DNA of 64,000 nucleotides from Lama glama (taxonomy: Eukaryota). Below the pieces are notes generated by a model. The model was given only the letters and a program-made list of their open reading frames with translations. It did not search any database and was not told where the DNA came from. The position numbers were made by a program, and so were the translations under genes. Positions 3,339 through 50,559 of this stretch are shown one piece after another. The stretch covers positions 1,178,001 through 1,242,000 of the forward strand of contig CM052842.1 of assembly GCA_028534125.1 (NCBI GenBank), given 5' to 3'. Positions within the stretch are counted from its first letter, which is position 1, and every line of letters begins with the position of its first letter.

Positions 3339-8819
<5,481 letters not shown>

Positions 8820-44789: not shown

Positions 44790-44990
44790 CTCCAGAGTTC
44801 CAATACTGGCTGTGCCATCTGGGTGCTGTGAGACCTTGGGCAAGGAGCTCAGCCTTTCTGCGCTGTCTCCCTCATTTGTTAGGATGGGACTGATAACTGC
44901 TGGTAGGACTGTTGTGAGAAGGTAATGAGATAATGTGTATCAAGTGTTTAGAACAGTTAGAACACACAGCATGTGCTCAATCAATACTAG
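44790..44990 (+). mobile_element. MIR SINE
   Basis: gctgtgagaccttgggcaag...gttgtgagaaggtaatgagataatgt...tgctcaat core. Confidence 0.7.
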
Positions 44991-45618
44991 CTACGACTGG
45001 CACGTCTCAAAAGACATATTAGCGACACTCACTTGTCTAAAGTAAGATTCAGAGGGGCAGAAAGCCTCTTACTGTGCTGTCCATGGTCCAGCGCAGCTCT
45101 AGGCCAATAGCGGGTACTCCATAAATATTCGATGGACAAACGAAGGCAGGACTGAAGGAACACCCCAGCATTCACAAGGTGGTTGTCGCTTACTCATGCC
45201 TAGCAAATATGGATTCCAGGCACGGGGTAGGGGGATGGCAGGTGTAAAGGCACAGCACGTCGACGTCGCCTGATGGGGCTGGAAGGTGAGGGACAAAGCT
45301 GAGAAACTGGTCGGGGCAGGTGGCGGAGGGCCTTGAATACCCAGACCAGGATTTGGGACTTGCCTTCGGGTGTGGGCGTGGTTGGAGGCAGCAGTCCATA
45401 GAGTTGCGCTACTGGTGGGGTTCTGCGTGCTTTCAGAAGGAGACCGGCCTCAAGTGGAAGCGGGGTGGGGTTGGAGAGCGGAGGGCCCAAGGCTGCGAGT
45501 CTGTGAACAGGGATCTGTGCTAGCATTCGCCGCGCGTTACTCCCTCCCTCTCTGCGTCTTTGTGCGTTTCGCTTCCTTTCGCAGTAAACGTTCTTCCGAG
45601 AAATTCCAAGGGGGTCTC

Positions 45619-45725
45619 AGCCAAGCAGAGGGGGAAGGGATCCTGCCCACGCCTGGGCAGGGAGAGGTGGAGGTGGGAGGGCGCACGGGGTAGCGGCCCA
45701 GGGAGTGGGAACCCGAGAGGGCGGG
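45619..45725 (+). repeat. Left arm of a perfect 107-bp inverted repeat
   Basis: Exact reverse complement of 46833..46939. Confidence 0.95.
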
Positions 45726-45843
45726 CGCGCGCGGGCGAGCGGGACGCCGGCTAGCAAGGGGGCGCAGGACCGCCCGGGACGGTGACCCGGCGCGGGCCCC
45801 AGGCCCCGGGCGCCCCCGCCCGCGCGTCTCCCGCCGCCCCCGC

Positions 45844-45975
45844 NNNNNNNNNNNNNNNNNNNNNNNNNNNNNNNNNNNNNNNNNNNNNNNNNNNNNNNNN
45901 NNNNNNNNNNNNNNNNNNNNNNNNNNNNNNNNNNNNNNNNNNNNNNNNNNNNNNNNNNNNNNNNNNNNNNNNNNN
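45844..45975. other. N run (132 nt) in the LY6H CpG island
   Basis: Directly visible. Confidence 0.95.
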
Positions 45976-46536
45976 GCCGCCCGCGCCACCCGGAGCCGCG
46001 GAGTCCCGACACCCCAGGGATGTGAGTGCGCCCCCCGACCCGTGGCCCGCGCTCCATGCCCGGGTTCCGCGGTGAGCGCTGTAGCGCGCGCGGGGAGGGG
46101 GCCTGGCGCGGGGTTCCCGGCTCCCCGGCCCAGGGGTGGGGGGTGGGGACGTGGCATGCTCCCCTCCCCCACCGGCAGGTACCGTCCACTCGCACCTTGT
46201 GCTGCCTTTTGCTCTCCGGACGCACCTACCGCTCCCCAAGGAGAAGACGCGCTTCCCGACCCCCCCCCCCATCCCACAGGTGCTGGGCGTGCGGTGGGGG
46301 CATTTCGGGCTGTCACCCCGCTGGAGAGGACAGACCTATTCTCCCTGGAAGGGATGCAGTGATGGTGGACGCTCTGGGGGATGGGCTGGGGGCGGGGCTT
46401 TGGGAGCTTTGGGAGCTTTGGGACGACCCCCGGCCTTGGATTCCAAGGAGGAGGTTGCGTTAGGATGCCAGAAAAGGGGAGGGTCCTTCGAGCTTGGCAG
46501 GGGCTGGATCTCTTGACCGAGGCTTCTCCTTGCCAG

Positions 46537-46664
46537 GCCTGCGCTGCAGACGACCCCCGCCCGCAGCCCCAGCGCATTCCCAAGGCCCGCCTGGAGCATG
46601 TTGCCTGCAGCCATGAAGGGCCTCGGCCTGGTGCTGCTGGCCATCCTGCTGTGCTCTGCGCCCG
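46537..46664 (+). CDS. LY6H: LY6H signal-peptide exon (ATG 46598; fully coding in the long isoform)
   Basis: Acceptor cttctccttgccAG at 46535-46536; donor G|GTGAGT at 46665. Confidence 0.9.
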
Positions 46665-48156
46665 GTGAGTCTGGGGGCGGACCGCGGGGATAGGCCAGGT
46701 CGCCTGAGATCCTGTGAGTGCGCGTCTGCTCTGGAGAGAGCGAGTGTGGGGCCACCCTGCTCCTAGAGGAAGGTGCCCATCAAGCCCACACCCCATCCCT
46801 GCGACCCTAGCCCGTTTCCCTCCGGCTTTGCACCCGCCCTCTCGGGTTCCCACTCCCTGGGCCGCTACCCCGTGCGCCCTCCCACCTCCACCTCTCCCTG
46901 CCCAGGCGTGGGCAGGATCCCTTCCCCCTCTGCTTGGCTCCTCCGGTGTTGCCCCAGAGCTAGTCTGGTCTGTCCTGGCTCCTGGGGGCACTGGGTGCTT
47001 TTCCTCTGGGCCTTGGTCCAGCAGCTCGTCCTGCACGGGTGCCCCTGGCTTAGTTGCGAGGGTTCTTGTGCTCATCTCTTCTCAGCACCGCCTGGCCTCC
47101 CATCAGGACCTGTTTGGTCCTTCCTAGCTTGGAGCCAACTGGATTCGGGGTGTGTGTGCGCAACTGCTATTAGGGCACTATAGGTGTGATACGTGTGGCT
47201 ACGTGTGCACACACTATGCACGTGTGTGGGGCCAGGGAAGGGGACTGGGGCCTCCAGAGTCCCAGTGGTGGGACCTTCGCCCTGAGGTGCCCAAGGCTCA
47301 CGGGTTCTCCCAGCCCTGCTCCACAACTTCCCGGTGCCAGTTCGGCCTGGTCACTCCCGGTCAGGGGTGCCCGGCCTCCTAGGGCTGCATGCTTCTCCTA
47401 GGCCTGCCTGCAGCAGGCAAGTGAAGGGGTTGCGGGGGGCTGACTGGCCTGGCCCCAGTTCTTCAGGCCATCCTCCTCCCTGTGCCCTGCCCAGCTCACG
47501 GTCTGTGGTGCCAGGACTGCACACTGACCACCAACTCCAGTCACTGCACCCCGAAGCAGTGCCAGCCGTCGGACACGGTGTGTGCCAGTGTCCGGATCAC
47601 AGACCCCAGCAGCAGTAAGTCAGGCCCCACGCTGGGGTGGGGGGGGCGGCGGTATCCCTGGAGCCCCTCTGCCCTCAGGCAAGAGCATGGGTTGCGGCAG
47701 GACGCTGCCCTGTTGTGTGATAGCGAGCAGGTGCCTGTCCCTTTCTGGCACCTCTGTGGCCCTTTCCATGTAGCTGGGGACAGCGTGGGTGGGTTGAAGC
47801 CTGGGTTCTGCTGTTTTGGGGTCCTGAGCTGACCTGGAGGGGCCCTAGGCTGGGTCCTGGGCACAAGGCAGAGAGATCCGGGTGGGATTCTAGTCCCAGG
47901 CTCCCCTCCCTCTTCCCCAGGCAGGAAGGATCATTCCGTGAACAAGATGTGTGCCTCGTCCTGCGATTTTGTGAAGCGGCACTTTTTCTCAGACTACCTG
48001 ATGGGCTTCATTAACTCTGGGATCTTGAAAGTAGACGTGGACTGCTGTGAGAAGGATTTGTGCAACGGTGTGGCCCGGGCGGGGCGCAGCCCCTGGGCCC
48101 TGGCCGGGGGGCTCCTGCTCAGCCTGGGGCCCGCCCTCCTCTGGGCTGGGCCCTGA
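46598..48156 (+). CDS. LY6H: LY6H; CDS join(46598..46664, 47495..47614, 47921..48156), 423 nt, 140 aa
   Basis: MLPAAMKGLGLVLLAILLCSAP/AHGLWCQDCTLTTNSSHCTPKQCQPSDTVCASVRITDPSS/SRKDHSVNKMCASSCDFVKRHFFSDYLMGFINSGILKVDVDCCEKDLCNG...WAGP*, near-identical to recalled LY6H. GT-AG phase-1 introns. Confidence 0.97.
46833..46939 (-). repeat. Right arm of the 107-bp inverted repeat, in an LY6H intron
   Basis: Exact reverse complement of 45619..45725. Confidence 0.95.
47495..47614 (+). CDS. LY6H: LY6H LU-domain exon
   Basis: Acceptor ccctgcccAG; donor A|GTAAGT. Confidence 0.95.
47921..48156 (+). CDS. LY6H: LY6H last coding exon
   Basis: Acceptor tcttccccAG; CCEKDLCN motif; GPI signal; TGA. Confidence 0.95.
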
Positions 48157-48476
48157 GGTCCCCTCTCTCCCGCAGGGCTTCTGAGCTTGTCCCCATCCCC
48201 CGAGCCTGTGGCTGCCCCCTCCCCAGCCTGGCCTGGCTGGCAGGGGGGCAGCCTTGGCTCTGCTCCACAGTCTGTGGCCCTCGCCCTTCCCCAGACGTGA
48301 CTTCCTTGTCTCTCCAACAGCTCCAAATCTCAGCCAGCAGGACATCTCCAGGAATCAGGCGTCCAGCAGGAGACTGGGGGTGACGGCAGGGTGCTGGGAC
48401 CCTAGGTCTGTGAGTGCAGTCAGGCTGAGCCAGGCCCAGCCCGATAGCCTGGCTGTGAGGGCCTCCTCTATGGAGA

Positions 48477-48482
48477 AATAAA
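48477..48482 (+). terminator. LY6H polyadenylation signal AATAAA
   Basis: AATAAA about 320 nt past the stop codon. Confidence 0.8.
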
Positions 48483-50559
48483 GTCACTTTTGAGTCCAGA
48501 GACCTGGGTCTGAGCCTGGGTGGGGGTGCTGGGGGGCTTCCTGGCAGAGAAAGCACAAGTGGCAGGGCGGGCAGGCACTGGTACTCTGCAGGCTGTGTGT
48601 GCGCTGGGCTGCTGGGGACATGGACCTGGTAAGGTTTGGGAACAGCCTGAGGGGCAGTGGGAGTTGAGGTGAACAGGATCACAGGGTGCGCCCGAGGGCG
48701 AGGCCTTGCAGCCCTGTGTGCAAACGTTAGGGACATGGGACGAGCAGACTCACACCCAGGTCCACAGAGGGCACACTCCCCACCCACGACACGCTCACGC
48801 CCACAGGCGCCCCCGTGTGCACAAACTAACACGTTCACGTCACACCAGCTCCTGAACCAGCGCGCCCAGTGCAGGCACGTCCACGCCCCCCGTGCATGCG
48901 CGCACACGGGAACAAAACATGCCCCGTGTGTAGGTCTCTCCGCCCCTGAGTGTCAGCTCCCCTGAGAGCTCTCCGGGCCGCTTTTGGCTCACCTGCAGAC
49001 CTTGCGTGCCCTCCCTTGGCCTGGGAACCAGACATCCCCCCACCCCGCCCTGAGTTGGGTGCCATGGGCAGGGTCTCAAAGGCAGTCCCCTGACCAGGAT
49101 TGAGGAAGCCCACGCCCCTGTGTGGGATGGCACAAATGGCCTGGGCACTTACGGTGGGAGGGAGCAGAGGAGGGCCAGTGGAGGTTAACCTGAGGGTGTT
49201 GCTTCTCCGGCTCTTCCTGCTCCAGCAGTGGGTCTGCGGTTCATCCCTGCACCCCGAGTCCAGCCCAGACTCCACACCATCTGGCCAGGTGGCTTGTCCT
49301 GTTTCCCAGGCTCACCACGTGATACCCAGTGATCACTCCAGGCTTTCTCTGGGATCTGGTCTTTGGCTATTTCCTCTTCATTCCTCTGTGGCTGGCCCGG
49401 CCTGTGGTCACTCCTTGGTCCCCGACTCCTTGGAAAGAGTGATAGTTCCTCTACGAGCTGGCCTTGGCATCCGTCCACCTGGCTTCTCTGCGTGAGGGAT
49501 GGAGAGGGGTCTGGGGGTCCCGGGTGAGTGAACCAGAGAGAAGAGTGGGGTTGCTGGAGACTGGTGTCAATTTCCTGCTGGTGGAAACGGCCGAGGGACC
49601 TGTCAGAGGGGCACCTCCTGCTGCGTTTTAAGTTTGCTCTGCTGCTCTGCGATGTACCCACCCCCCCAAGCCTCAGTAAAGCGCTCTACCCATCGAGTGT
49701 GTCTGCTGCTTTCGAGAGCGTGGGGAGGGGGTGGTGCTGACGGGTGGCGTAGAAGGCGGCAGCTGGCTCAGGGGAGACTTGGAGAGAACCTGGGGATTCG
49801 GAGGAGGCTGGGAGCTGAAGCCGTGGGAGATGTGGAGCACTGGAAGCCCTGGTGGTGCTGGGAGGACGTGGACCTGCCACCCCACAGGCTTGGGGTTCAC
49901 ACCAACCTTTACGTCCATCTTTGCTGAATTGATTATTTAAGGGAAGTGCTTAAAACGTAAAAAGGAGTGAAGTTCTTCCAGCTATTTAAGAAAGACACGA
50001 CTAGCAGTGGACGGGGGCTTCCAGGGAGGGCAGCGTGGCCCTGATAACCCGGCCTCGACACCTCAGCTGTGGACCTGAGTGTGTGCCCCACCTCCAAAAC
50101 CCTCTGAGGAGTCCTCGCCTTTGCGAGCTGTGGCAGAAGGGTCGAAGCCCGCCCTCTGTGTGAAGGGCTCGGCCCCTGGGCACGTGCGTGGCACTGGAAA
50201 GCCATGGTGCCACGGATTCCTTCTCTGAACCGCTCAGCAAGGGCGCCTTCCTGGGCCAGCACGTCTGGACAGACCTTTCGCTCAGTGTCTGCTGAGTGCC
50301 CCCTGGACCGACGAGCTGGGGCTCAGCCAGCCACCCTTGTTGGTGGGCATGGGGGTCCACTCAGGCGTTTTCGTCTGCAGCGCTGCCATTACCGTCCTGG
50401 TCCTCATGTCCTCGTGGGACTGGGGAGTTACTTCTGTCGGGTCGATTCTGGGATGGGGGAGCTGAGCCAGGGAGGACATCTACTTGAAAATGAAACATGT
50501 GCCTCAGAAAAGGTCGAGTTGCAGTCACACCACCTCCTTCCGCGTCAGTCACTGTGGGT

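What the first reader, a model, noticed from the sequence alone, without database searches (positions are those of the whole stretch)
45619..46939. Perfect 107-bp inverted repeat bracketing the LY6H promoter, first exon and signal-peptide exon
Seen: 45619..45725 is the exact reverse complement of 46833..46939 (107/107, including 6 CpGs), with a 1107-bp spacer. The arms resemble no transposon I recognise and identity stops abruptly at both ends. The spacer holds the CpG-island core, the AT|GT exon (ends 46021) and the signal-peptide exon (46537..46664). Inference: this identity in non-coding DNA needs a recent template-switch duplication, ongoing arm-to-arm gene conversion, or an assembly artefact (an N run lies inside the spacer).
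Basis: partly seen in the sequence, partly recalled or inferred. Interest (0 to 1): 0.85.

Follow-up and report, generated by a model that had tools for sequence, protein, structure and literature searches.

The report
Perfect inverted copy beside LY6H gap
A 107-base stretch appears twice, in opposite orientation, on either side of the LY6H promoter in this camelid assembly. I could not show that both copies exist in the animal, and the copy next to the assembly gap is slightly more likely an assembly error than a young real duplication.

Summary
45619-45725 is the exact reverse complement of 46833-46939 (107/107). It is the only exact repeat of 24 nt or more in the 64-kb window. The arms bracket the LY6H CpG island, exon 1, an alternative exon and the signal-peptide exon.

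No camelid DNA or ORFs were reachable otherwise.

Indirect evidence:
- The flanks show no decayed homology, so this is not an old repeat kept alike by gene conversion.
- The CpG profile says the sequence belongs in intron 2. That makes arm 1 the copy, and it lies 118 nt from the 132-N gap at a contig end.
- Word shares of 0.99 in eight runs weakly support arm 2.
- Unchecked notes list at least seven similar 84-240-nt inverted repeats elsewhere in this genome.

My odds are 0.55 for a spurious arm 1, 0.37 for a real template-switch inverted duplication less than about 1-3 My old, and under 0.1 for everything else. An invertible promoter cassette is very unlikely. Interest is low either way.

The parts
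45619..45725 (+). Arm 1. G-rich on the + strand, inside the CpG island, 118 nt from the gap edge. Probably the derived copy, real or spurious.
   Evidence: Searches give the exact match; the outer 60 nt have 1 CpG (o/e 0.17), set between L1 (o/e 1.38) and R1 (o/e 1.05), so the block looks like an intruder here.
45726..45843 (+). Contig end between arm 1 and the gap (R1). 88% G+C with 24 CpG, promoter-proximal CpG-island sequence.
   Evidence: It aligns weakly (E 0.002) to the C-terminal part of antisense ORF P0085 from another mammal.
45844..45975 (.). Assembly gap of 132 N in the CpG-island core. Not filled and not looked up.
   Evidence: Gaps at GC-rich promoters are typical of Sanger/Illumina drafts (PMC9516821).
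45976..46021 (+). 3' end of LY6H exon 1 (5'UTR plus the AT of the start codon). The donor is AT|GTGAGT. The 5' limit is unknown because of the gap.
   Evidence: Residue 1 of P0072 is split between exons, and residues 2-43 start at 46538.
46180..46279 (+). Alternative exon used by Camelus LY6H isoform X1 (P0082). Here the position of the start codon reads AGG and the poly-C tract differs.
   Evidence: (94% over 32 residues).
46537..46664 (+). LY6H exon 2: upstream in-frame extension plus the signal peptide. The ATG is at 46598.
46833..46939 (-). Arm 2 in intron 2, C-rich on the + strand like its flanks, mid-contig. Probably the native copy.
   Evidence: neighbouring CpG o/e is 0.25-0.39, which fits the arm's 0.51; word share 0.99 in 8 runs.

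Best explanation
Arm 1 is a spurious read-length inverted copy of real intron-2 sequence (arm 2). It was built into the end of the contig that borders the unsequenced, extremely GC-rich core of the LY6H CpG island. The inferred mechanism is this. Coverage collapses at 76-93% G+C. At such places a single chimeric molecule, or a local contig-end or gap-closing step fed by mates from about 1.2 kb downstream on the opposite strand, can decide the consensus. A strand-switched chimeric molecule can arise from polymerase strand-switching or fold-back pairing during library preparation or cloning. The result is a perfect inverted duplicate that exists only in the assembly and has no function. What is shown: the exact repeat, its position at a contig end, and that its composition does not fit site 1. 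What is inferred: that reads do not support the two junctions of arm 1.
For: (1) Arm 1 lies 118 nt from the gap edge, and the two arms sit on different contigs. (2) Identity is 107/107 including 6 CpG. The length is about one short read (read length is my knowledge). (3) The CpG profile makes arm 1 the copy. Its outer 60 nt hold 1 CpG (o/e 0.17) between L1 at 1.38 and R1 at 1.05. At site 2 the neighbours are 0.25-0.39. My Poisson likelihood ratio is about 8 for site 2 being native. So the derived copy is the one at the low-coverage contig end. (4) Arm 2 itself is weakly supported by reads. Eight runs from 3 organisms and 2 studies hold 0.99 of 269 sampled words, so at most 4 are missing. About 6.5 would be missing if both arm-2 junctions were absent (Poisson P about 0.23). 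(5) GC-rich promoters are the classic places of missing or wrong sequence in Sanger/Illumina drafts, and false duplications often sit beside gaps (PMC9516821 and PMC9516828). Library preparation makes chimeric reads that join a strand to its inverted complement (PMC10908179). (6) As a lead only, unchecked notes on this genome list at least 7 similar 84-240-nt near-perfect inverted repeats of unique sequence in 536 windows. They also list an 8.9-kb 100% palindrome folded round an N gap.
Against: No read or independent assembly was examined, so absence of arm 1 is not shown. An artefact needs two false junctions, 45618|45619 and 45725|45726, with no N and no shared sequence beyond the arm. Graph assemblers do not normally create such joins without reads that carry them. 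One in-vivo switch-and-return event explains both junctions at once. A gap in a CpG-island core is expected anyway, so its presence is only weak evidence. The interval holding arm 2 is 72-93 nt longer here than in the ORF of one non-human mammal (P0087). That hints part of arm 2 is itself lineage-specific. I do not know which assembler was used.
Confidence: 0.55

Rival explanations
1. The repeat is a real, very young inverted duplication. A replication template switch (switch-and-return; long-range four-point, FoSTeS/MMBIR-like) copied 107 nt of intron 2 in reverse complement into the upstream edge of the LY6H CpG island. It is probably neutral, less than about 1-3 My old, and may be polymorphic or limited to some New World camelids.
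For: One event yields exactly this signature: a discrete reverse-complement block with two clean junctions and no flanking homology (model in PMC5453318). The arm is G-rich with 11 G-runs of 3 or more. G-rich sequence of this kind can stall forks (my knowledge). Both contigs read straight through their arm without N. Arm 2 is weakly supported in 8 runs. Perfect identity fits a recent event. CpG-island gaps occur regardless of any repeat.
Against: At 107 nt copied over about 1.2 kb, it is longer and more distant than the short-range events the cited model was built for. The new copy happens to lie 118 nt from a gap, at the least reliable part of the contig. No independent molecule has been seen. 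Zero differences over 107 nt with 6 CpG demands a very recent origin.
Confidence: 0.37
2. It is an old inverted repeat whose arms are kept identical by ongoing gene conversion.
For: Only the perfect identity, including the CpGs.
Against: There is no decayed homology outside the 107-110-nt block in either orientation. The arms are shorter than the tracts usually needed for efficient mammalian conversion (my knowledge). The arm's CpG content fits only one of the two sites. The outgroup interval at arm 2 is shorter.
Confidence: 0.03
3. Both arms are copies of an interspersed repeat or another multi-copy element.
For: None was found. A genome-wide check was not possible.
Against: There is no other copy in 64 kb. 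Identity is exact with sharp ends and no TSD-like feature. A 46-mer of the arm is absent from metagenome contigs. No Rfam family matched, with best E 0.38-0.5 at scores far below gathering, and those matches lie outside the arms.
Confidence: 0.03
4. It is an invertible promoter and signal-peptide cassette that flips by recombination between the arms (note s1-860075).
For: Only the geometry: inverted arms bracket the promoter and exons 1-2.
Against: Flipping would turn exons 1-2 away from exons 3-4 and abolish LY6H. The arms are short for homologous recombination, and no recombinase system is known for such a switch in mammals (my knowledge). The exons are in the productive orientation here. 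The existence of arm 1 is itself in doubt.
Confidence: 0.01

Closest known systems
False duplications and chimeric-read artefacts next to gaps at GC-rich promoters in draft assemblies (PMC9516828, PMC9516821, PMC10908179)
   Same: The duplicate is perfect, sits at a contig end beside a gap in a CpG-island promoter, and joins one strand to its inverted complement at read-length scale.
   Different: The described false duplications are mostly haplotype- or read-length copies in direct orientation and far larger. The described library chimeras have a single junction and short distances. This case needs two junctions and about 1.2 kb.
Template-switch mutations: the four-point model of Loytynoja and Goldman (PMC5453318); FoSTeS/MMBIR templated insertions
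   Same: A fragment is replaced or extended by the reverse complement of nearby sequence in one switch-and-return event, creating a perfect inverted repeat.
   Different: The published model deals with short-range events and states that it does not try to explain long-range switches. This block is 107 nt, copied from about 1.2 kb away. The ancestral state and any microhomology cannot be seen.
Invertible promoter switches of bacteria (fim/hin type)
   Same: Inverted repeats flank a promoter-bearing segment.
   Different: There is no site-specific recombinase and no evidence of both orientations. Inversion here would separate exons 1-2 from exons 3-4.
Intronic inverted repeat pairs (for example Alu pairs) that drive back-splicing or make dsRNA
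   Same: Complementary arms bracket exons.
   Different: Arm 1 lies upstream of the annotated first exon, so it is not in the main pre-mRNA. No upstream exon was found in the window.

Membership tests
Genuine genomic inverted duplication | Two exact or near-exact arms in inverted orientation at the stated places | tested here: met
   107/107.
Genuine genomic inverted duplication | All four arm junctions are present in independent reads or assemblies, with both arms on one molecule | not testable with these tools
No camelid ORFs were in the protein collections. The only indirect result is the 0.99 word share for the arm-2 contig.
Genuine genomic inverted duplication | Not a dispersed repeat | tested here: inconclusive
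   No other copy in the window and 0 hits in metagenome contigs. The genome at large was not searchable.
Assembly artefact (spurious copy at a contig end or gap) | The duplicate lies at a contig end or gap in a low-coverage GC-rich region, and is perfect and of read-length scale | tested here: met
   118 nt from the gap, local G+C 73-88%, length 107 nt.
Assembly artefact (spurious copy at a contig end or gap) | The junctions of the spurious copy are unsupported by reads, and depth shows no second copy | not testable with these tools
Old inverted repeat homogenised by gene conversion | Diverged homology continues beyond the identical core, and both arms are present in outgroups | tested here: not met
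   Flank alignments score no better than shuffles. The outgroup interval at arm 2 is 72-93 nt shorter in P0087, though that protein-level alignment is ambiguous.
Short-range template-switch mutation (four-point model) | A reverse-complement copy of a nearby fragment with two switch points, confirmed against the ancestral sequence | tested here: inconclusive
   The reverse-complement block with sharp ends is met. The distance and length exceed the short-range class.
Invertible promoter cassette | Both orientations are observed and a recombination system exists | not tested
   No reads were available. Only the productive orientation is present in the window.

The most novel reading that the evidence does not exclude
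The repeat is real and is one instance of a recurrent germline process in this camelid lineage. In that process, roughly 100-nt reverse-complement copies of nearby sequence are inserted at G-rich CpG-island promoters. Unchecked notes list LY6H, NEMP1 and others. This would be a long-range template-switch signature at fork-stalling promoters. Here it places an inverted G-rich, GC-box-bearing element on both sides of the LY6H promoter and first exons.
Probability: 0.08. Interest if true: 0.55.

Novelty: not a real feature. Interest (0 to 1): 0.15.

Why it matters
If arm 1 is spurious, the lesson is practical. Perfect read-length inverted duplicates beside gaps in this assembly should not be read as biology, whether as invertible cassettes, conversion or RNA duplexes. 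The LY6H promoter model here is also unreliable upstream of exon 1. If arm 1 is real, it is a small, young, probably neutral templated inverted duplication. That would be a clean example of a long-range switch-and-return event and a possible population marker, but it would not be a new kind of element.

Tried and rejected
I also withheld their mirror copy 46896-46939, which I masked with N or X in local comparisons with fetched proteins. Local scripts on the window alone did read them.
- **Metagenome scan** for a 46-nt inner-arm pattern gave 0 hits.
- **Protein-collection route to Logan contigs.** The 306-aa antisense ORF window:45978-46895:- found only ORFs of other mammals at 49-79% identity and no camelid ORFs. 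The graph-branch test therefore could not be made.
- **Outgroup direction test.** The alignments are ambiguous at protein level. P0084 has a signal-peptide region compatible with a primate-type LY6H (inferred from the antisense reading). I cannot exclude a human origin, so I set it aside, do not build on it and did not search for more of it.
- **Representative search** with the L1 ORF window:45203-45526:- gave 0 hits.
- **Upstream MIHR exon** of dromedary isoform X2 was not found in the window.
- **Rfam** on 45663-46895 gave nothing near a gathering score.
- **Earlier-findings searches** for a followed-up inverted repeat or artefact returned nothing.
Exons were searched and compared one by one, by reference.
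- **The gap** was not filled. From ORFs that cross the orthologous region I used coordinates only.

Full report
**Observation.** The repeat is exactly as described. 45619-45725 equals the reverse complement of 46833-46939 at 107 of 107 positions. The repeat finder extends it to 110 nt at 99%. The arm is 73% G+C with 6 CpG. An exact 24-mer index of the whole 64-kb window finds no other direct or inverted repeat. No arm 16-mer occurs elsewhere in the window. The match is therefore far beyond chance and, within the window, is not a dispersed element. The window has three N runs. The one at 45844-45975 (132 N) lies between the arms, so the arms are on two different contigs of one scaffold. Arm 1 ends 118 nt before the gap.

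**Setting.** The gene is LY6H on the + strand.
- Camelus LY6H proteins came from a search with the exon-3 ORF and a cluster look-up.
- They align to 46538-46663 (exon 2, 97.6%; signal peptide 100%), to exon 3 ending near 47610, and to 47914-48153 (exon 4).
- Exon 1 ends AT|GT at 46021 and supplies two bases of an upstream start codon.
- An alternative exon used by Camelus isoform X1 maps to 46180-46275.
- The window reads PALQ where all Camelus sequences read PAPQ, and it differs in a poly-C tract. The animal is therefore a camelid but probably not Camelus (inference).
- CpG o/e is 0.74-1.08 from 45400 to 46199 and 0.33-0.53 downstream. Arm 1 thus lies in the CpG island and arm 2 in a CpG-depleted intron.

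- No LY6H reading frame crosses it, because it lies in the promoter/5'UTR. The long minus-strand ORFs that cross it are spurious.
- One antisense ORF from a non-human mammal (P0085) aligns to the right flank (46400 to 45975) and, weakly (E 0.002), to the left flank (45841 to 45758). Both matches are on the same strand and in the same order. Its signal-peptide region decodes to an LLAAL type; I recall the human sequence as LLAVL (from memory, not checked).
- That ORF has 36 residues (108 nt) in between, where the window has about 134 nt.
- This is weak support that the two contigs are correctly ordered, oriented and spaced. True continuity was not tested.

**The decisive test could not be run.** The look-up of sequencing runs listed 19 holders from five coded organisms and eight studies. 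I masked the mirror copy in comparisons with fetched proteins. That removed access to other camelid assemblies. A metagenome scan with a 46-nt inner-arm pattern found nothing.

I then tried to reach Logan contigs through the protein collection. The query was the long antisense ORF made only of permitted letters (window:45978-46895:-). It returned ORFs of other mammals at 49-79% identity and none from camelids. A representative search with the ORF left of arm 1 found nothing.

**What the indirect evidence says.**
1. There is no residual similarity outside the block. Local alignments of the outer flanks and of the inner flanks, inverted or direct, score like shuffled sequence. This argues against an old repeat with a converted core.
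2. Direction of copying. The arm's outer 60 nt hold one CpG (o/e 0.17) and its inner 47 nt hold five (0.82).
   - At site 1 this creates a CpG trough between L1 (1.38) and R1 (1.05).
   - At site 2 it continues the low values of the neighbours (0.25-0.39).
   - My Poisson comparison favours site 2 as the native context by about 8 to 1. GC skew agrees.
   - Arm 1, the arm at the contig end, is therefore probably the copy.
3. A contrary hint. In the antisense ORF of a non-human mammal (P0087), the interval that holds arm 2 is 72-93 nt shorter than in the window, depending on the anchor used. Protein-level alignment of non-coding DNA is ambiguous, so I give this little weight. P0084 showed a similar difference (96 nt). 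Its sequence is compatible with a primate-type LY6H and I cannot exclude a human origin. I set it aside and searched no further for it.
4. Word shares. Runs X1-X8 (three organisms, two studies) hold 0.99 of 269 sampled 31-mers of 45976-48500, so at most four are missing. If both arm-2 junctions were absent from reads, about 6.5 sampled words should be missing (Poisson P about 0.23). This weakly supports arm 2 and says nothing about arm 1.
5. Leads only. Unchecked notes on this genome list at least seven other 84-240-nt near-perfect inverted repeats of unique sequence with spacers of roughly 0.5-3.5 kb, including one at the NEMP1 promoter. They also list an 8.9-kb perfect palindrome folded round an N gap. 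That pattern could be a systematic artefact or a real mutational process. I could test none of them.

**Weighing the two main readings.**

*For an artefact:*
- The derived copy sits 118 nt from a gap, in 73-88% G+C sequence where coverage in Sanger/Illumina drafts collapses (PMC9516821).
- False duplications often sit beside gaps (PMC9516828).
- Library preparation makes chimeric molecules that join a strand to its inverted complement (PMC10908179).
- The copy is perfect and about one read long.

*Against an artefact:*
- It needs two false junctions with no shared sequence, and assemblers do not make such joins without reads that carry them.
- A single replication switch-and-return event produces exactly this signature (PMC5453318), although that model is explicitly short-range.
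- A gap in a CpG-island core is expected whether or not the repeat is real.

I put a spurious arm 1 at 0.55 and a real young templated inverted duplication at 0.37. If real, zero differences over 107 nt with 6 CpG implies an age below roughly 1-3 My. That estimate uses ordinary mammalian mutation rates from my own knowledge. Such a duplication could be polymorphic among New World camelids.

**Function.** None is indicated.
- Arm 1 lies upstream of exon 1, so the arms do not pair within the main pre-mRNA. I found no upstream exon in the window.
- Inversion between the arms would uncouple exons 1-2 from exons 3-4.
- Rfam finds nothing.
- The invertible-cassette idea is therefore very unlikely.

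**Verdict.** The feature is unresolved but is more likely an assembly error than biology. If real, it is a small member of a known class of rearrangement.

Noticed in passing
window 47404-47480 versus 46601-46663: A degenerate direct copy of the signal-peptide exon lies just upstream of exon 3 in intron 2. tblastn reads LPAAGK*..GLAPVLQAILLPVPCP against LPAAMKGLGLVLLAILLCSAP, and the repeat finder family D2 gives 73% over 37 nt. It may be an old internal duplication of the leader exon.
   Followed up: partly
window 46177-46279: The alternative exon that gives Camelus LY6H isoform X1 its N-terminus (P0082) is present at 94%. The position of its start codon reads AGG here, and the poly-C tract at its end differs, which should shift the frame into exon 2 by my reading. 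That isoform is probably not encoded in this species, or the homopolymer length is an assembly error.
   Followed up: partly
window 3420-3620 and 3740-3873: The other two N runs are separated by a 119-nt island. They appear to lie inside what looks like a tandem C2H2 zinc-finger array on the minus strand (my reading of the sequence, not searched). Such a repeat would be expected to break a short-read assembly.
   Followed up: no
window 45976-47075, minus strand: A stop-free antisense frame of more than 360 codons runs through exon 2, intron 1 and exon 1. Similar antisense ORFs were called on contigs of several other mammals (P0083-P0089). This is a by-product of high G+C, not a gene, but it shows how gene callers populate protein collections with CpG-island ORFs.
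   Followed up: partly
window 44790-45010: The sequence looks like an old MIR-type SINE fragment upstream of the LY6H promoter. I recognised it by eye only.
   Followed up: no
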